Of a DNA stretch of 64,000 nucleotides, positions 42,850-60,060 are shown piece after piece (positions within the stretch are counted from its first letter, which is position 1; the number at the start of each line of letters is the position of its first letter). A model generated the notes under the pieces. The model was not told where the DNA came from. It saw only the letters and a list, made by a program, of their open reading frames with translations, and did no database searches. This DNA is from Macrostomum lignano. Its lineage: Eukaryota. Made by a program: the position numbers and the translations under genes. The DNA lies in assembly GCA_002269645.1 (NCBI GenBank), contig NIVC01000024.1, positions 829,437 to 893,436 on the forward strand, in the 5' to 3' direction.

Positions 42850-43381
42850 CCCCTCCCCTATTGATATTATGGGCTGAATGCAAATCAGTCGAATCCATTT
42901 TTTTGTAAAATAGTTTGGATTTCCAGCTTTGAACAATATCCTAAGAAACAAAGCATTCCGATCCCGCCCTTCTACGCTTGTCGAGTACTTGAGTGCTCTC
43001 TGCTTCCGCCTGAGGCCAGCTAACGTTTTGCTCAGTTTGTCCATGGAATTGCAAATTCTTGAAATGATTCCAATTATCCTACCCTCCTTACTTAGAAAGT
43101 TATCAAAACTATTCGTAAATTCTTTCAACAGCTGCGGCAGAAGCAGAATGTTTGCCATAGATTTATCAATTTGTTATTCCATTGAAAAAACTCCATTAGC
43201 AAACCTGCGCATCCTTAAAAGCTGTTGATTCTTCAGCACCGAGATGCATATGGGGGTACTCCAGTGACTGACAAGTTCTGAACCAGCTTTTAAATTGACA
43301 GGAGATCAATTATTATTGGTACGCTTCTCAAGGTAAAAGCCCTGACAGAACTGAGTCTCATCGGTGAGCCCCAACATCCGC

Positions 43382-44134
43382 ATGCAGCTTCATCAGATCG
43401 CCACAGCACTCGCTCTGCAAGCGGCAGTCTGCCAGCTGCTCTGGGCGTCAGCTCAACCGTGCCCCGCTCCGTTCAGCCTCGAGGCCGGCAAATGCGTGTT
43501 CGTGAGCACAGCTCACAGCCACAGCTGGTGCTCAGCGAATCGGCACTGCGCATCGATCGGAGGCGAGCTGCTCAACTCGTACAGCTCATTGCAGTTGCTG
43601 GGCAGCATGCCGAGTACCAAATGTGGCTGCAACATCTGGCTCGGAGTGTCTGACCTGGCTGAGGAGAGAGTCACGAGCAGGTCGGACTGGCAGAGGGTCA
43701 ACGGCAACGGCCAGCTGCCAAAAGACGACTCGCTGTGGCATAGAAATGATCCGAGCAACTCTGGAGGACATGAGGACTGCATCGCGTGGTACTTCACATC
43801 ATATGCGAAGATAGTCGACATGAAGTGCTCAGCGCTGGCTGGCTTTGCCTGCGAGTTCGTTGAGACTCCGCGAGAAGCTCCAGCTGGAGCATCATGGCTG
43901 CGGACTCCGTTCAAGCGCACCAGCTACAACCCCAGCTCCGAGTTCTGCCACGCTGACCTGCTGCAGGTGAAGAACGCAATGCACTGCGTGGCAGCCGGCA
44001 TGCGTGCGGCCAGCTGCAGACACGTGCTGTACAACAGCAAGCTGAGAGCCTGCCGTCTGCTGCTGTTTACTGACGCTCAGGTGGAGGCGGAGATCGAGAC
44101 GAACGCCGACTGGGTCAAGTTCAGCGTGTTCTGA
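43382..44134 (+). CDS. Secreted C-type lectin domain + C-terminal PAN/apple-like domain, 250 aa, intronless
   Basis: Signal peptide; CP..F....GKCV, W..A..HC...GG.L, IWLG.SD, W....P.N....EDC, D.KC....F.CE; C-terminal FC...HC....SC..V.Y....CRL pattern (PAN assignment is less certain). Confidence 0.85.
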   Translation: MQLHQIATALALQAAVCQLLWASAQPCPAPFSLEAGKCVFVSTAHSHSWCSANRHCASIGGELLNSYSSLQLLGSMPSTKCGCNIWLGVSDLAEERVTSRSDWQRVNGNGQLPKDDSLWHRNDPSNSGGHEDCIAWYFTSYAKIVDMKCSALAGFACEFVETPREAPAGASWLRTPFKRTSYNPSSEFCHADLLQVKNAMHCVAAGMRAASCRHVLYNSKLRACRLLLFTDAQVEAEIETNADWVKFSVF

Positions 44135-44633: not shown

Positions 44634-44640
44634 TATAAAA
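44634..44640 (+). promoter_or_regulatory. TATA box upstream of the tandem-domain precursor
   Basis: TATAAAA ~130 bp before the ATG at 44767. Confidence 0.5.
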
Positions 44641-44766
44641 GACCATCGGATCTGATAGAGCAGGTATTCATTGAGCTCATCTCCGAGCACTCAGACCAAA
44701 GCAAACACCTGCGAGCACTCAGTCCAAAGCAAGCACCTCTGAGCACTCAGTCCGATGCACTTTGCA

Positions 44767-46623
44767 ATGCGCGCTCTGCTGCCTCTGCTGTTCGTCCTCT
44801 GCGGCGCTCTGGTCGTCGCCGACCCACTGCCCGAGGCCGACCAGCGAAGCCTTCGAGCGTCCCTGGCCGGCTTCGCCAGCCGCCTGGCCGCCACCGAGGC
44901 CGCTGACGTCGCTCGGCTGGTGCGCAACTTCACGAGCTCCGCGGAGGACGTCAGCTTTGTCGAGGGCTCGGTGGACGCGGCAAAGGCGGTCCAGCAGCTG
45001 CGCTTCCTGCCCGCCCACTTCGTCAGCCGGCTGCTGCGAGTTGCCGAGTCCGAAGACTTTGCGGCCACCTCGTTCGCGATTGAGGTCGAGGTGCCGCTGT
45101 GTCGCTACCAGCTGTTCGTCGGCTCCGCCCGGACCTCCGGAAGCGCCATCTAGTTCGGCGCTTTCTCCACTCTCGTCTCGTGCAGCTTCGCGTCTAGGGA
45201 CTGCGGAGACTGGGCGTTGCCATGGAGACGCTGCGATGAGGCGGAGTGGGGACCGGCTGTCCGTGAAATGCCGGCGCTGACGGCACTGCTCAGGCGAGAA
45301 GCAGCAAGTCGGATCCTGAGTCACCCAGCCATGGCTGCTCAACCGGCTTCACTCAGGAGGTATCGGAGGTCGGCGGGAAGCCAGGATTCGCTCCGCACCG
45401 GCGTGAGCAGCTTCCTGTCGAAGTTCCAGTGGTTGAGCGACCTCGTGAAGAGGCAGGAGCTGACGGTGTCCACGCCGATCCGAAGAATCACCAGCAGAGG
45501 CTTCGAGGTTTTCAGCCAGAGCGCCTCCATGCAGGCGATCGCGGAGGTCGATCCCAGCCAGTACCCTAGCTTTGTTGAGTACGCGCTCAACATGATTGAC
45601 GTGTCGCCGACCGTAAGAAGCGAGGTGAGGCGGGGCGTCTTCGACCTGCTGCCGTTCCTCGGACAGAGCGAGTGGCACGACTTCAACATCCTGTTTCGCT
45701 CCGGCTCGGGCGGCTCCACGAAGTTCGTCAGCGTCCTGGCGCACAATGGCGGCTCCCGGGGCTTCGACTTCGTGATTGCCGACTTCCAGACGTCGTTCCA
45801 GCTCGCCCCGGACCTGCTGGTGGTCGAGCGAAAGTCCAGCTCGATGTGGGGCGCCTTCGGCTCATCCGAGACCGTCATCCACAAAGTCCCCGCGTCCATT
45901 CGGGACGCCGACCTCGACGTTCTGATGGCGTTCTTCGACCTGGCTGCTTTCCGCAGGTTTGCCCTCATGCTGGACATCCCGGTGAGAGGCGCCCGCTTCA
46001 GAAGGTCTGCAGCCGTTGGGTACATCGCCGCGGTGCAGGCAGGCGTCAAGCTGTATGGCCAGATCGCCAAGACCTTCTCCACCAAGAAGACGTCGCAGAT
46101 TGTCGGCAAGATCATCGGGAAGGGCTTCGACTTCTTCTCCATGCAGTCGCGGGCCCACGTGATCTCCCGGATGAACCCAGTCTTCCTGCCGCGGTTTCTC
46201 GGAATGCTGGACCGGCTGTACGGCTTTCCCGCAAAGTACCTGCCTCAGGTGAGCGCCGTGATGGAGATGGTGCAGTTCGTGAGCCACCAGGACTGGAACA
46301 AGAACGACTTCCTGTTTGACGTGAACAGCGGCGGCCACAACGCGTGGGTGACGGTTCTGTCCAACCGGAACGAGGACGGCACCTTCAACTTCCTGATCGC
46401 CAACGTGCGGCAGCGCTTCCGGCTGGCACCGGATGTGCTCATCATCAAGGAGTCCAAGTCCGTGCTGGGCGGCATCTACCAGTCGGAGAAGTACAAGCTC
46501 CAGCGAATTCCAAGGAGCATCACAGAGGAGGACCTGCAGGCGCTGACCAACTTCTTCAACATCATCACCTTCAAGAGGTTCGGCCTGCAGCTGAACGTCG
46601 ACACCCAGCAGCTGGACCCGTGA
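44767..46623 (+). CDS. Secreted precursor of unknown family: signal + pro-region + two homologous ~205-aa domains preceded by RYRR and RFRR; single in-frame TAG at 45151-45153
   Basis: ORFs 44755-45153 and 45217-46623 are in the same frame and the intervening 21 codons are stop-free. Signal MRALLPLLFVLCGALVVA; internal duplication visible by eye (GFEVFS/GFDFFS, LAPDLLVV/LAPDVLII, FRRF/FKRF). Confidence 0.75.
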
Positions 46624-47125: not shown

Positions 47126-47872
47126 TCAGTGCACGCTGAACTTGACCCAGTCGGCGCTCGTCTCGATCTCCTCCTCCACCTGAGCGTCGGTGAACAGCAG
47201 CAGGCGGCAGGCTCTCAGCTTGCTGTTGTACAGCACGTGTCTGCTGATTCCGGAGTCGGAAGCGGAAATCACGCAGGCAACCTCTGATTTGACGTTCTCT
47301 AAATCAGCGTGGCAGTACTCGGAGCTGGGGTTGTAGCTGGTGCGCTTGAACGGAGTCCGCTGCCACAGCAGGCCAGAGGCAGAGCGAGGCTGAGCTGCGC
47401 CAACGAACTCGCAGGCGAAGCCGCGCAGTTCCGAGCAGACGTTGTCAGACAGCTTCCCGATCGCGTCATTGTACTGTCCGATGCAGTCCTGGTTGTTTCC
47501 TCTGTTGTTTGGATCGCCTGCTCGCCACACGGAGTCATTCAGAGGCAGAATGCCCTTGCCTTTCACCAGCTGCCAGCCCGACTTGCTCGTGCCTCTCTCC
47601 TCAGCCAGGTCGGACACTCCGAGCCAGATGCTGCAGTTGCAGCTGAGACTCGGCATGCTGCCCAGCAACTGCAGCGAGCTGTGCGAGTTGAGCAGCTCGC
47701 CTCCGATCGATGCGCAGTGCCGATTCGCTGAGCACCAGGTGAAGCTTTGAGCTGTGCTCACGAACACGCATTTGCCGGCCTCGAGGCGGAACGGAGCGGG
47801 GCACTGGCACAGAGCTCGCTGCAAGTTCACCGCAACCAGAGCCAACAAGACGATAGCAGAGCTCGAAGGCAT
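47126..47872 (-). CDS. Secreted C-type lectin + PAN/apple-like protein, 248 aa, intronless paralog of 43382-44134
   Basis: Signal MPSSSAIVLLALVAVNLQRALC; near-identical blocks CPAPF.LEAGKCVFVSTA, TPFKRTSYNPSSE.CHADL, VLYNSKLRACRLLLFTDAQVE. Confidence 0.85.
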   Translation of the reverse strand: MPSSSAIVLLALVAVNLQRALCQCPAPFRLEAGKCVFVSTAQSFTWCSANRHCASIGGELLNSHSSLQLLGSMPSLSCNCSIWLGVSDLAEERGTSKSGWQLVKGKGILPLNDSVWRAGDPNNRGNNQDCIGQYNDAIGKLSDNVCSELRGFACEFVGAAQPRSASGLLWQRTPFKRTSYNPSSEYCHADLENVKSEVACVISASDSGISRHVLYNSKLRACRLLLFTDAQVEEEIETSADWVKFSVH

Positions 47873-50800
47873 CAGCTCAGCAGTTTCTGGGAACGGATAC
47901 CGCAAGGCGATTTTTTGAGCTTTCAAAGGAATCATTTATATAGATGATTGCAGGGTGTTGCGAATTCAAGGGTATTTGGCAAGCCATCATTCTATTTGTT
48001 TTGACAGCAGCTTGTTTGAATAGTTAATTGACTCGCTCAACTGTTACGGGCAGAAAATTTCCCGCTTTCAGATCCACCTGGTTTGGCGCGTCAGCTGACT
48101 CGACAGGAGCTCCGGCTTCGTGGGTTTCCTTGACCAAAGTAGCAGCATGCATGATTGACAGTCCATTAGCCAAAATATATTTCTCTGTGAGCGGAGAGCC
48201 AAGCCATCGACTGTGGAGAGAAAGCTGTTAGGCATCTCAGAAAGCTTTTAAGTGAGTCGTCCATTACAGCATTATTCAGCGTGCAGTAACTGACTCCCAG
48301 ATAAAATGTTGATTTAGACATCTTGACATCCTTGAATCAAAACTTTTGTCCTGGCACTGTTTACCAGACCCAAACTGATGGGTACTATCTCTGGCCTCTC
48401 ACTCCTATCGGATAGTCAGCCCCAAGGCTAGCATAGGTGTAAACCGGGACAATTTCGAATAATAAACATTAGCTAATCCTGAGATTAACCTAATCCAACC
48501 AGTCCAAACCAGCCGTCTCGAAAACTGACTAAAAAGGGCTCTGCACCAACCTGCAAACTAGATGCCTTTTACCTGCTGCTGGGAATGGATCGCATTGACC
48601 ATGCAGGGACAGAGGACTCATTTTTGAAGGAGGTTCTTGCAAGGCCAGACTATAGGGTAGGGGAATGCATACTAATACATTATCAAGTTCCTATATGCAA
48701 GCTTCTGGCCATATGTGACTGCAAACTCTCCAATAGCGCTGATGCTGAGCAGTCATAGCCCTCTGCAAGACCCCATCGGTAGCATGGTGAATTCTGACAT
48801 TAGATAAGCCACTTATGAAGCCTGAGTCAGCACTAGACCCTCTGGTAAATAAACCAGATAACATCACTAGAACTTTCGCTCAAACAAGCTAACATGCCCT
48901 ATTCCGGTTATGCAAAATTTTATCTTGTATGAATCCTGTTTGCGTGACGAAATCTTACGTTTCCTTGTTTCAAACAAGATTCAAATAGGATTCACTGACC
49001 AGGTAACAGTCGGATAATTTATGCGAATCTTGCAGGGAAACATCGTGTTATCCTGTTTGTTATCTTGTCCGACAAACAAGATTCGCTGACAAGGTAATAT
49101 AGCCGGGTAATTCATGCGAATGAAAGGCGGAAAGCATTGAAATAAAATATTTCGCAGTAAAGAAGCGTATAAAAAGTGGTTGCTTCAAGATGTTATGAGT
49201 AGCACCTATTTAACAGCGGGGTGTCATTTGTAAGCGCCTTATACAAACTAAACGGTAGCTCAACAGGAACGGAAACGTATGGAGTACAGCTTAGCAGAAG
49301 TCTATGAGTTTCGGGAGTCCAGTTATAATAAGTAGACCTTTAGACCTACTTATTATACTGTGGATACCGATTGATACTACAGAATTGCTGATCTGCTGCG
49401 ATTTGGTGCTGAGTCGCAGGTCGGACCTGCTGGACTCGGACGCGAATCTGACGCCAGTCGACGCGTGAGCCAGACGTTGGAAAGATCGGGTCGCGCGGCC
49501 GGACGGCGATTAATGAGACCACTGACGGGGGCTTGCATTATATGCCGGCGCAGTGGAACGACTCTGCATTATAAAGTTAAATTAAATGGCGATGGAAGGC
49601 AGTTTCTCAGAAATATACACAGAAAACAGTAATGTACATACACATTCGATTGTCTCGCTCTAAGAGACAGCGACGGTTCGCCGACAGGCATTGCAACCAG
49701 ATTGGACTGTTCGCTAGTAATGTCAGCTGCGTCGATAGAATTGTCATTCGTAGGCTGGTCGTCATCCGGAATCAACTGGCTTTCGTTGATCGGCTGCTCG
49801 TAGACCCGAGACGAAGTGAATGGCGTATCATCTGATGCGCCGGCTCAAGCGGCGATGGCTTCGTCGTGCAGTTGCGTCCACGAAATGCCGACTGCGCTGG
49901 AAACTCTCCCGTTGGAAAATTTATGCACCAGCAGAGGCATAAAAGGTGAGCGAGGTGCACAAAAGAGGCACTTAGTGGCCTATTTCGTGTGTGTTTTGGA
50001 AGTGCACCTGAGTGCACCTTTTTGTGCCTAAATGTCACCAGCCGTTATTATCCCCTAACTGATTCTTCAGGAGGATCACTCACTGTTATCCCCCCTCTCA
50101 TCAGTCCCTGAGAAGTGGCACTAAAACAAGACCGAGAGATGTCAGTCCAATTCAAATGGCTTCAGCATCGCCAGCTTCAGCGTCGGTGGATTCAGCATCG
50201 TCGGCTTCAGGGTCGGCGTCAGCTTCGGCTGATGACTGACCGGCCGTCTGCTTCCTCTGCGTATTTTCGCCGGAGGGCCGGACAGCTGTTTTCATTTCAT
50301 CATCCGGTCGGGTTATAAAATTGCGCATTTAGGTTTTACAACTTGAACGGTTGAAAACGCGGATGGGAGTTTTTAAAAAGGAAAAAAATTGTCCCACACT
50401 TGCCGAAAAGGTGCCACAACTCTTAATGCTACATATGTAAGTAAAAGAAAATCATGAAAGTAACATTTCCTACACTGATAAGTCCCAATGACTTTCAAAT
50501 ACAGAGGAAAAGTTCCGAAAAGCGGTGAAAAGGTCCCAAGCCGCTTTGGGGCAAACAGCACCCAACTAATCAAACCGCAGGCACATCTGTGACAACAGGG
50601 CATATGTTGTTATAACATCTGCAGATGAGACGGTCTGATAACAATACGGTGTGTATCAAATTATGTTTTTTAGTACTTTTCATTTTATTTGTGCAAAAAA
50701 GGGATGCACGATAATGAAGATAGTAAGAAAGAGTAGGAAGCTGCTGAGGAAAATTTATGAGGGAAAAGTGTATATAGTATAAGTTACTATGCAAAATTAA

Positions 50801-58573: not shown

Positions 58574-59030
58574 CTACACAGCACAGTACGGAGTGACGCC
58601 AGTATCGCAGTGCAATTGAACGCACACCACTGAAGCTGGCTGTGCTCCATCAATAGCCAGGCTGTACCGGCGGGTCACCCGATACCGCAAGCTGTCCATA
58701 CCGCTGGTTCTATCTCGCCTGAAGGTCAATTCCCGCTGATTGCCAACAATGCGGCTGTCCCGGGCGTGCCTGCGCGGATCGTGCAGATGGACGAAACTGG
58801 CCGTGCCGCTTGACAGATTGCGCAATCGACCAATAGACAGACCGGCCTCCATTAATCTAAGCCGGAACTCGTCGTCCTCGCGACCCCAGCCCCAGAATAG
58901 GTTGGAGAAGCCGCCAGACTTGGCGAATGCCTCACGCGTTAACAGCAGAATGCCGCCCATGTACTCTTTGTAGTGGTACTGCGGGTTGAGGGTTGACGGG
59001 TCGACGGTGTTCTTGAATGGGGCTTCATTG
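58574..59030 (-). CDS. B4GALT7: Beta-1,4-galactosyltransferase 7 (xylosylprotein galactosyltransferase), C-terminal part only
   Basis: LNPQYHYKEYMGGILLL...SNLFWGWGREDDEF...FVHLHDP...RD...LHCD...TPYC matches B4GALT7. The N-terminal TM region and DVD motif are not present in the window. Confidence 0.85.
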
Positions 59031-60060
59031 CGATTGTTTCTTAGCAGTACATCACAACTCTTTTTTGAAGGGTTGTACATGTACAGGACAACTCTCTTTT
59101 GAAGGATTGTACATGTACATGATGTAACCGCCCTTGTCGCCTGTCCGCTCCGTAGAGAGACGAACGCATGGCTAGAGGGGGCAATGACCGTAGGCTGCCT
59201 ATGACCGGGCAATGACCTGACGGACCTCCAGCACCAGACTGTCCCGCCCACATGATTAGTAGCTTTGGTAGCGCTTCGTGACCAGAGGGCCAAGGACCCA
59301 CATGGACCCCACCTGTAGCCAAGGTGCAATAGTTGGTCACTCGGTCATGGTATGACCGAGTGGCTGCCACCACTCTATGTGACCTGGCGCACCTGGATCT
59401 TTCTACCAGACCTCTCGAGGCTAGAGCCCCGCCTGGATTGGTTACCAGGGGATTTAGGCTAACAGGGGAGACGCATGCAGCCGAGTACAGGGACTCTGCT
59501 TGGGGCATGATCGGGAACTCTGGGCTCAATCCTGGAGGATTTCTCAGCAGGGGATCCTTTGTGGCTGTGAGCGAGGCTGACTTGCGACTTTGATTACTAA
59601 GAGTAGTATGAGGCGAACATGTACTGTCTACAGTTTAGATTGCTCAGGGCGAAGGGACGCGTTAGCATGGGGTTGCAACCTTCCTGCTGCCATTCTGTGC
59701 CAAGACTCGCTAATCCCTCTACTGCACGCACACGCGGCCCCGCAGCACGCACTCACAGGCGGGCTTTGCACGGGGAGAGGCCATTAGCTTACCCAAACTT
59801 CCTTATGCTTTGCCACCCCGGGAGAAAGGCTTAGCAAGCCATGAGTGAAATGATGGTGAAAGATTGAATAATGATGAAGTTAGTTAATAGTTAATAATTA
59901 GGCCCTTAGGCAAATAATCAGGCAATTAGGCGGCTTCACTATTGAGTAAAATACAGCAAAAGATACGGTATCACAATTGGCTCAGCTCTCTAATCAGACA
60001 ATGGAAAATAGGCAAACCCCGGATAAGCAAAGGCAATTAGAGCACAAATTAGTAACAGGA

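What the first reader, a model, noticed from the sequence alone, without database searches (positions are those of the whole stretch)
44767..46623. Intronless secreted precursor with two homologous domains released by furin-type sites; candidate two-component effector or toxin
Seen: signal peptide, a ~180-aa pro-region with 4 Cys, RRYRR|S (45355-69), domain 1 (45370-46005) ending in RFRR|S (45994-46005), and domain 2 (46006-46620). The two Cys-free domains align throughout: ITSRGFEVFS/IIGKGFDFFS, EW.DF..LF/DW.KNDFLF, FDFVIA..FQLAPDLLVV/FNFLIA..FRLAPDVLII, MWGAF.SSE/LGGIY.SE, VP.SI...DL..FF...FRRF/IP.SI...DL..FF...FKRF. Known: R-X-R/K-R is the furin consensus. Inference: processing yields two related subunits, each opening with an amphipathic-looking helix (e.g. 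VGYIAAVQAGVKLYGQIAKTF) and carrying a Gly/aromatic-tipped hairpin, features seen in membrane-active proteins. I recognise no named family.
Basis: partly seen in the sequence, partly recalled or inferred. Interest (0 to 1): 0.85.

Follow-up and report, generated by a model that had tools for sequence, protein, structure and literature searches.

The report
Broken copy of uncharacterised secreted three-module gene
This flatworm (Macrostomum lignano) gene encodes a secreted protein made of three related modules of a so-far undescribed protein family shared with protists and probably giant viruses, with convertase-type cutting sites exactly between the modules; the copy in this window carries a premature stop codon, and nothing found here shows it is a toxin.

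Summary
However, this copy has an in-frame TAG at 45151-45153, where two sister copies in Macrostomum lignano have CAG (Gln). NCBI models this copy as a 451-aa protein with no signal peptide.

The "pro-region" is a diverged third copy of the same module (hhalign 93.9%, E=1.6e-7). The module defines a large unnamed family: 581 clusters at 50% identity. Members looked up come from environmental eukaryote data, the protist Ancoracysta twista and a giant-virus-like contig.

No Pfam or PDB sequence match was found. A confident AlphaFold model (pLDDT 85.8) has no Foldseek match in the PDB.

The only two R-X-[KR]-R motifs sit at the two module junctions (shuffle P=1.5e-4). One lies in a low-confidence linker. 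Both are absent from about 18 other distinct two-domain relatives, including the worm's own paralog. Cleavage is therefore plausible but specific to this gene group.

Support for a membrane-active toxin is weak: low helical amphipathicity, no structural match to pore-formers, and no conserved catalytic-type residues. Function remains unknown. My best guess is a non-enzymatic secreted binding or assembly module.

The parts
44685..44754 (+). 5' leader: a 28-nt direct repeat (GAGCACTCAG[A/T]CCAAAGCAA[A/G]CACCT..), about 2.5 copies, ending at the start codon. Copy g3 has one unit fewer, judged from its partial protein model.
   Evidence: Sequence read; P0183.
44755..44820 (+). Start codon and predicted signal peptide (MHFAMRALLPLLFVLCGALVVA). 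Cleavage after VVA is inferred.
   Evidence: GRAVY 2.04. No signal-peptide predictor was available.
44821..45354 (+). N module (residues 23-200) with 4 Cys. It is a diverged third copy of the D fold and the fastest-evolving part of the gene.
   Evidence: jackhmmer finds it in N-D-D relatives. hhalign of N profile against D profile: 93.9%, E=1.6e-7. Substitutions against g1: 2 synonymous, 9 nonsynonymous.
45151..45153 (+). In-frame TAG (codon 133) that breaks this copy. It is CAG (Gln) in g1 and Gln in g3.
45355..45369 (+). RRYRR, an R-X-R-R convertase-type site at the N/D1 junction, followed by SAGSQ.
   Evidence: g1 has RRSRR and g3 has GRSRR.
45370..46005 (+). Module D1 (212 aa). No amino-acid change among the three M. 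lignano copies.
   Evidence: 12 synonymous and 0 nonsynonymous differences against g1.
45994..46005 (+). RFRR, the convertase-type site at the D1/D2 junction, followed by SAAVG. It lies in a linker with pLDDT below 50.
46006..46623 (+). Module D2 (205 aa) plus the TGA stop. This is the canonical family-type module.
45268..46623 (+). The ORF as modelled in the public annotation of this copy (P0184, 451 aa, starting at an internal Met, no signal peptide).
   Evidence: exact identity to the window translation.

Best explanation
The window is Macrostomum lignano DNA.

The locus is one of three 97-98% identical copies of gene cluster Mlig000053. The gene is single-exon. Its product is a signal peptide followed by three homologous alpha+beta modules of about 200 aa: a diverged, disulfide-bearing N module, then D1 and D2.

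The modules belong to a large protein family that has no name and no solved structure. Family members are secreted or membrane-anchored and carry one to four modules. They occur in many unicellular eukaryotes and probably in giant viruses.

The conserved positions are Gly, Pro, aromatic and hydrophobic residues (GF..F, W, F.LAPD, S..GG, P..T..D..FF). There is no catalytic-type set of residues. I therefore infer that the module is a non-enzymatic binding or assembly scaffold.

In the Mlig000053 lineage only, R-X-R-R sites arose in both flexible inter-module linkers. I infer that the intact copies are cut by a furin/PC-type convertase in the secretory pathway into three pieces of about 20-23 kDa. 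This resembles a small polyprotein. Cleavage is not required for the family's basic function.

The copy in this window has a CAG>TAG change in the N module and an excess of private amino-acid changes. It is most likely a recently disabled duplicate.

Shown: anatomy, homology, family size, site placement, the stop codon. Inferred: cleavage, non-enzymatic binding role, pseudogene status.
For: Species and copies:
- Identified.
- The public gene models are transcript-derived (PMC5730564).

Stop codon:
- Seen: - Of the amino-acid changes that can be polarised, 9 are private to the window copy and 3 to g1.

Selection:
- D1 has 12 synonymous and 0 nonsynonymous differences, D2 has 5 and 3, and N has 2 and 9.

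Domain homology:
- D1 against D2, E=4e-29.
- N profile against D profile, hhalign 93.9%, E=1.6e-7.

Family:
- 581 representative clusters at E<=1e-3 and 79 at E<=1e-30.
- Architectures seen are N-D-D, D-D, D, D-N-D and proteins with three or four detected D stretches.
- Sources of the 30 clusters looked up: M. lignano, Ancoracysta twista (EukProt), MERC/Tara, JGI and Logan.
- Two relatives sit in eukaryotic gene contexts.
- One relative is on a contig with 29% GC, 89% coding density and mostly ORFan genes, from a 0.22-0.45 um Tara sample.
- Foldseek against BFVD: the best hits are uncharacterised Mimiviridae proteins of about 190-270 aa, probability 0.84-0.96.

No known family:
- Pfam gave nothing for the window protein or 83+20 relatives.
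- PDB sequence and profile searches gave nothing.
- The AlphaFold model has pLDDT 85.8. Foldseek against PDB gave a best E of 0.04 and TM of 0.13.

Cleavage sites:
- There are only two motifs, both at junctions, P=1.5e-4.
- The D1/D2 linker has pLDDT below 50.
- The sites are absent from all other two-domain relatives.

Conservation pattern.
Against: - No direct evidence of cleavage, secretion, expression of this particular copy, or any ligand.
- The TAG comes from the same public assembly as the window, so a base-calling error or a strain polymorphism is not excluded.
- 9 versus 3 private changes is only suggestive.
- Only 30 of the 581 clusters were looked up for their source, so the taxonomic picture is partial.
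- No library of predicted cellular structures (AlphaFold DB) or InterPro could be searched, so a named relative may exist.
- The giant-virus assignment of contig L002 rests on gene density, GC content and size fraction only.
Confidence: 0.6

Rival explanations
1. Convertase cleavage releases two related subunits that act together as a membrane-active (pore-forming or lytic) two-component toxin or antimicrobial effector. The freed N-terminal helices and the Gly/aromatic hairpins insert into target membranes.
For: - Both sites are placed precisely upstream of the N-terminal helix of a module.
- The D2 helix SAAVGYIAAVQAGVKLYGQIA is rich in Gly/Ala and mildly hydrophobic (<H> 0.47), and D2 is basic (pI 9.8).
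- The conserved GG-aromatic motif is at a hairpin tip.
- One relative (P0112) carries a weak arthropod-defensin-like Cys motif: E=0.0011, 19.3 bits, below the Pfam cut-off of 20.4.
- In P0026 the helix before one module looks like a glycine zipper and gave a sub-threshold Pfam hit (C19orf12, E=0.079).
Against: - Hydrophobic moments of the opening helices are low, 0.20-0.32.
- No Pfam or Foldseek similarity to actinoporins, aerolysins, Cyt toxins, MACPF or BPI.
- The typical family domain is acidic (median pI 5.7), and most carry a Cys.
- The cleavage sites are absent in all relatives outside Mlig000053.
- The M. lignano paralog is a single uncleaved chain by sequence.
Confidence: 0.15
2. The modules are self-assembling cargo of regulated secretory granules or an extracellular coat, for example flatworm rhabdite or mucus glands and protist extrusomes. 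Convertase cleavage is then a maturation step that permits condensation. This would be analogous to ciliate trichocyst matrix proteins.
For: - Relatives include the extrusome-bearing predator Ancoracysta twista, and some come from MERC marine metatranscriptome data.
- Conserved residues are core or scaffold types with no conserved surface site.
- The family domains are mostly acidic and about 20 kDa.
- Trichocyst matrix biogenesis involves proteolytic maturation of precursors into small acidic polypeptides that crystallise (PMC2119969).
Against: - Homology to trichocyst (TMP) or granule lattice (Grl) proteins was not tested because no sequences were at hand. From my own memory those proteins are predicted to be mostly helical heptad repeats, unlike the beta-rich D module.
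- None of the 30 clusters looked up came from the annotated Paramecium or Tetrahymena proteomes.
- No expression or localisation data were found for Mlig000053.
Confidence: 0.15
3. The window copy is intact and functional. The TAG would be an assembly or base-calling error, or a polymorphism of the sequenced line.
For: - The difference is a single base.
- D1 and D2 downstream of the stop are still under apparent purifying selection against g1, 17 synonymous to 3 nonsynonymous.
- The assembly is known to be redundant, with many blocks at least 95% identical (PMC5730564).
Against: - The public annotation of the same contig also truncates this copy (P0184).
- The window copy has three times more private amino-acid changes than g1.
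- The synonymous differences could predate a recent nonsense mutation.
Confidence: 0.2

Closest known systems
Convertase-processed polyprotein precursors of repeated binding units, e.g. nematode polyprotein allergens/lipid-binding proteins (own knowledge, not tested here)
   Same: A secreted precursor made of tandem homologous units, separated by R-X-K/R-R sites in the linkers, so that one gene yields several similar small proteins.
   Different: - Only three units here.
- The units are about 200-aa alpha+beta modules, not ~15-kDa helical bundles.
- No sequence or structural similarity.
- The sites are confined to one M. lignano gene cluster.
- Ligand binding is not shown.
Ciliate trichocyst matrix / granule lattice protein precursors
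   Same: Secreted protist precursors that are proteolytically matured into small, mostly acidic polypeptides (PMC2119969). The size range of two-module family members (440-470 aa) is similar to my recollection of those precursors.
   Different: Homology was not tested. No ciliate proteins appeared among the clusters looked up. The predicted beta-rich fold differs from the helical heptad-repeat character I recall for those proteins.
Bet v 1 / START (helix-grip, SRPBCC) ligand-binding domains
   Same: The order of secondary-structure elements in each D core (strand, two helices, five antiparallel strands, long C-terminal helix) resembles the helix-grip order.
   Different: No Pfam match and no Foldseek match to any of the many solved helix-grip structures. 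D also has an extra N-terminal helical segment.
Small alpha+beta pore-forming toxins (actinoporins, Bacillus Cyt toxins) and furin-activated toxins
   Same: Modules of about 20 kDa with an N-terminal helix. A proteolytic step is positioned just before that helix.
   Different: No sequence or fold match. The helix is weakly amphipathic. No activity data exist.
Uncharacterised ~190-270-aa proteins of Mimiviridae (Hyperionvirus A0A3G5A862, Terrestrivirus A0A3G4ZN21, Borely moumouvirus A0A6G6ADX5)
   Same: These are the best structural matches found (Foldseek probability 0.84-0.96, E=4e-3 to 9e-3). They have the length of a single module.
   Different: The scores are marginal and sequence identity is 12-14%.

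Membership tests
Unnamed 'D-module' family (defined here) | Significant match to the profile built from the four M. lignano modules, with the motifs GF..F, W, F-x-L-A-P-D/N, S-x-x-G-G, P-x-x-x-T-x-x-D and FF. | tested here: met
   Both window modules are seeds of the profile. 581 clusters match at E<=1e-3. The motif conservation over 169 modules is listed.
Unnamed 'D-module' family (defined here) | A common predicted fold: N-terminal helices, strand, two helices, five-strand antiparallel sheet, long C-terminal helix. | tested here: met
   The AlphaFold model built with an 83-sequence alignment has pLDDT 85.8. D1 and D2 show the same order of elements.
Furin / proprotein-convertase substrates | Entry into the secretory pathway (signal peptide). 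| tested here: inconclusive
   The N-terminus is hydrophobic with a plausible VVA cleavage site, but no predictor was run. In this window copy the stop codon separates the signal peptide from the modules.
Furin / proprotein-convertase substrates | R-X-K/R-R motif in an exposed, flexible segment. | tested here: met
   RRYRR|S and RFRR|S are the only such motifs, and both lie at junctions (P=1.5e-4). The D1/D2 linker has pLDDT below 50. The N/D1 linker is Pro/Ala-rich.
Furin / proprotein-convertase substrates | Conservation of the sites in orthologs. | tested here: not met
   The sites are kept in the three 97-98% identical copies only. They are absent in Mlig009159 and about 18 other distinct two-domain relatives.
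Furin / proprotein-convertase substrates | Demonstrated cleavage products. | not testable with these tools
   This needs N-terminal sequencing or mass spectrometry.
Pore-forming toxins (actinoporin, aerolysin, Cyt, MACPF, BPI-like) | Sequence or fold match to the family. | tested here: not met
   Pfam: no hits for the window protein or 83 relatives. Foldseek against PDB: no match with E<0.04, and TM at most 0.13 for the top hit.
Pore-forming toxins (actinoporin, aerolysin, Cyt, MACPF, BPI-like) | A strongly amphipathic or hydrophobic membrane-inserting segment. | tested here: inconclusive
   The opening helices have a hydrophobic moment of 0.20-0.32. The D2 helix has <H> 0.47, which is mild.
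Bet v 1 / START helix-grip | Structural superposition on solved members. | tested here: not met
   None appears among the Foldseek PDB hits listed. Only the order of secondary-structure elements is similar.
Ciliate trichocyst matrix / granule lattice proteins | Sequence homology to TMP or Grl proteins. | not tested
C-type lectins (the flanking genes, not the finding itself) | Pfam Lectin_C above the gathering score. | tested here: met
   43364-44134(+) scores 28.4 bits and 47126-47935(-) scores 28.7 bits, against a cut-off of 22.6.

The most novel reading that the evidence does not exclude
The D module is a new protein fold carried by a secreted family that moves between protists, giant viruses and at least one animal. 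Macrostomum acquired it horizontally and then, by evolving convertase sites in both linkers, turned a single-chain protein into a processed multi-subunit membrane-active or defence effector.
Probability: 0.1. Interest if true: 0.8.

Novelty: categorically new. Interest (0 to 1): 0.5.

Why it matters
The family has hundreds of sequence clusters, and some members come from marine plankton metatranscriptome catalogues. Yet it has no Pfam entry, no solved structure and no function. A confident model with no PDB match suggests an undescribed fold.

Macrostomum lignano supports RNAi and transgenesis and would be a convenient animal in which to find out what the module does. The lineage-specific convertase sites offer a natural experiment on whether separating the modules changes the function.

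The patchy distribution (protists, giant-virus-like contigs, one flatworm) makes this a candidate case of gene transfer into an animal.

For this particular window the practical message is more modest. The copy here is probably a dead duplicate, and the 'toxin' label is unsupported.

Tried and rejected
- **Intron spanning the TAG.** Rejected. The window aligns without gaps to the intact single-exon copy g1 over all 1869 nt, and the stop is a single C>T change.
- **Second gene copy in the window.** None found by tblastn.
- **First AlphaFold run.** The full 622-aa protein with a 3-sequence alignment gave pLDDT 32 and was unusable.
- **The search for homologous proteins with alignments.** The run with A1 returned nothing and the run with A4 returned only the query's sister copy. 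This is a limit of the word index, not evidence of absence.
- **The search for related loci.**
  - P0112 against IMG/VR found no relatives.
  - The A1 pattern scan of 185,579 bacterial and archaeal genomes found no relatives. A bacterial origin is therefore unsupported, though sensitivity was limited.
- **Pfam on fusion partners of relatives.** Nothing above threshold.
- **Compositional sign of recent transfer.** None. The gene's GC3 is 85%, against 75-76% in the flanking animal-type lectin genes.
- **Expression and literature look-ups.** Searches for Mlig000053, Mlig009159 and their accessions found nothing in full text or in the supplements of four M. lignano papers.
- **Trichocyst/Grl homology.** Could not be tested. 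The older papers are held only as abstracts or not at all.

Full report
**What is in the sequence.**
Everything else checks.
- The N-terminus is hydrophobic (MHFAMRALLPLLFVLCGALVVA).
- Cys occurs at residue 16 (in the signal peptide) and at 116, 143, 150 and 160 only.
- RRYRR is at 45355-45369 and RFRR at 45994-46005.
- The two segments after these sites are clearly homologous: BLASTP E=4e-29, 29% identity over 173 residues.

**Whose gene it is, and the state of this copy.**
The closest database protein is BOX15_Mlig000053g1 of the flatworm Macrostomum lignano (P0001, 622 aa, 98% identical). The cluster has three members.
- g1 is P0001.
- g3 is P0183.
- P0184 is a 451-aa model that matches the window translation exactly from the internal Met at nt 45268 to the end. 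It lies on a contig of the same length (893,436 bp) as g1's contig, presumably the same one.

The public annotation of this copy therefore starts after the stop and has no signal peptide. The window aligns to g1 without gaps over 1869 nt with 31 differences, and the stop is a CAG>TAG substitution. An intron is excluded, and 'intronless' is correct for the intact copy.

Substitutions against g1 differ sharply by region.

| Region | Synonymous | Nonsynonymous |
|---|---|---|
| D1 | 12 | 0 |
| D2 | 5 | 3 |
| Signal peptide + N region | 2 | 9 |

Using g3 to polarise the changes, the window copy has 9 private amino-acid changes (including the stop), against 3 in g1. The simplest reading is that the modules are under purifying selection, the N region evolves fast, and this copy was recently disabled. 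An assembly error is not excluded, because the window and the annotation come from the same assembly.

Gene models in that assembly are built from RNA-seq transcripts, and copies at least 95% identical share one name (PMC5730564). The cluster as a whole is therefore transcribed, but which copy is expressed is unknown.

**The 'pro-region' is a third module.**
An iterative search seeded with residues 23-200 finds the same region in many relatives, usually in the order N-D-D but once as D-N-D (P0014). A profile-profile comparison of the N alignment against 169 aligned D modules gives 93.9% probability and E=1.6e-7 over 130 columns. In that alignment the S-x-x-G-G hairpin of D is replaced by a Cys-flanked hairpin in N. 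The precursor is thus a triple repeat, not a propeptide followed by two domains.

**The family.**
- A profile of the four M. lignano modules matched 581 representative clusters (50% identity level) at E<=1e-3 and 79 at E<=1e-30.
- Most complete members start with a signal-peptide-like segment and carry one to four modules. One has a C-terminal membrane anchor.
- Of 30 clusters looked up, the named sources were M. lignano and the predatory flagellate Ancoracysta twista (EukProt). The rest came from Tara/MERC, JGI, ENA and Logan environmental assemblies.
- Two relatives lie among ordinary eukaryotic genes such as TIP49, UQ_con, RabGAP-TBC and LITAF.
- One relative (P0112) lies on a 25-kb contig from a 0.22-0.45 um Tara sample. 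That contig has 29% GC, 89% coding density and mostly ORFan genes, which looks like a giant virus.
- A pattern scan of bacterial and archaeal genomes found nothing.

**Comparison with known families.**
- Pfam gave no hit for the window protein, for 83 aligned relatives or for 20 further relatives.
- PDB sequences gave nothing, whether searched with the single sequence or with a profile.
- With an 83-sequence alignment, AlphaFold2 gave a confident model of D1-D2 (pLDDT 85.8, pTM 0.61). Each module has N-terminal helices, a strand, two helices, five antiparallel strands and a long C-terminal helix. The RFRR linker has pLDDT below 50.
- Foldseek found no credible PDB match: best E=0.04 and TM 0.13.
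- Against predicted viral structures, the top four hits were uncharacterised Mimiviridae proteins of roughly single-module length (about 190-270 aa), at probability 0.84-0.96. This is marginal, but it fits the giant-virus-like contig.

**The cleavage sites.**
The protein contains exactly two R-X-[KR]-R motifs, each followed by Ser-Ala and each at a module boundary. Shuffling puts motifs in both 15-residue junction windows at a frequency of 1.5e-4. All three M. lignano copies keep them (RRSRR, RRYRR or GRSRR at the first site; RFRR at the second).

They are absent from the M. lignano paralog group Mlig009159, which has a signal peptide and D-D with no N module. They are also absent from about 18 other distinct two-domain relatives, whose linkers vary from about 10 to more than 60 residues.

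From established knowledge of proprotein convertases, such motifs in exposed linkers of secretory proteins are good substrates. Processing of the intact copies into N, D1 and D2 is therefore a reasonable inference. It is a lineage-specific addition, not a property of the family.

**What the modules do.**
The best-conserved positions across 169 modules are Gly, Pro, Trp, Phe and aliphatic residues, plus a capping-box-like T-x-x-D. There is no invariant His, Cys or Glu. This points to a scaffold rather than an enzyme.

- The opening helices have hydrophobic moments of 0.20-0.32.
- The D2 helix is only mildly hydrophobic.
- The median family module is acidic, with pI 5.7.
- Most family modules contain a Cys.

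Two sub-threshold Pfam hints exist: a defensin-like Cys motif in P0112 and a C19orf12-type hit at a Gly-rich helix in P0026.

I therefore favour a non-enzymatic secreted binding or assembly module. The membrane-active effector and granule-matrix cargo readings stay as less likely rivals. None of the three can be decided without experiments.

**D1/D2 history.**
The window's D2 scores best against the D2 of nearly all two-module relatives. D1 matches the D1 of only the closer relatives. The tandem arrangement is therefore old, and D2 is the canonical module.

**Origin.**
The gene sits between two animal-type C-type lectin genes, and a galactosyltransferase gene fragment lies downstream. Its GC3 of 85% is close to the 75-76% of its neighbours. 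It is a resident, compositionally adapted flatworm gene present as two subfamilies of three copies each. Transfer from a protist or virus is possible given the patchy distribution, but it would be old, and it was not tested phylogenetically.

**Verdict.**
It is unsupported on the toxin role and on the nature of the pro-region. The wider finding is a large, unnamed module family with no structural match in the PDB. That makes it moderately interesting. This particular copy is probably defunct.

Noticed in passing
window 43364-44134 (+) and 47126-47935 (-): Two paralogous secreted C-type-lectin genes flank the gene in inverted orientation. Lectin_C scores 28 bits in each; the upstream one has a weak PAN-like tail. 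They share about 81% nucleotide identity (inferred from matches of both to the same L001 segment). The same lectin-gene-lectin arrangement occurs at the g1 locus (L001), where about 6.3 kb of extra DNA sits between the upstream lectin and the gene.
   Followed up: partly
window 1-42400: The first two-thirds of the window are a mosaic of more than 25 different tandem arrays (periods 4-50 bp, up to about 1.4 kb each, many 85-99% internally identical). These arrays coincide with the extreme GC- and AT-skew blocks seen in the composition profile.
   Followed up: no
window 58574-59329 (-): An ORF with a strong beta-1,4-galactosyltransferase domain (Glyco_transf_7C, E=4.6e-21). It is probably one exon of an animal B4GalT gene.
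   Followed up: partly
window 44685-44754: A 28-nt direct repeat, about 2.5 copies, lies in the 5' leader directly before the ATG. Copy g3 appears to have one unit fewer. A TATAAAAG motif lies at 44634-44641.
   Followed up: no
L002 2763-5135 (relative P0112) and P0026 of Ancoracysta twista: These two relatives share an unusual architecture in which the profile detects three D stretches, the middle one only partially. A Gly-rich hydrophobic helix precedes the middle module, and P0112 also has a defensin-like Cys motif. P0112 sits on a giant-virus-like contig, which raises the question of virus-protist exchange of this family.
   Followed up: partly
P0187 (UniRef A0A1I8F1J1, M. lignano): An older 887-aa gene model fuses the Mlig009159 paralog to an unrelated C-terminal region and is named 'Lipase_3 domain-containing protein'. 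This is probably a gene-model fusion artefact and not a real domain combination.
   Followed up: no
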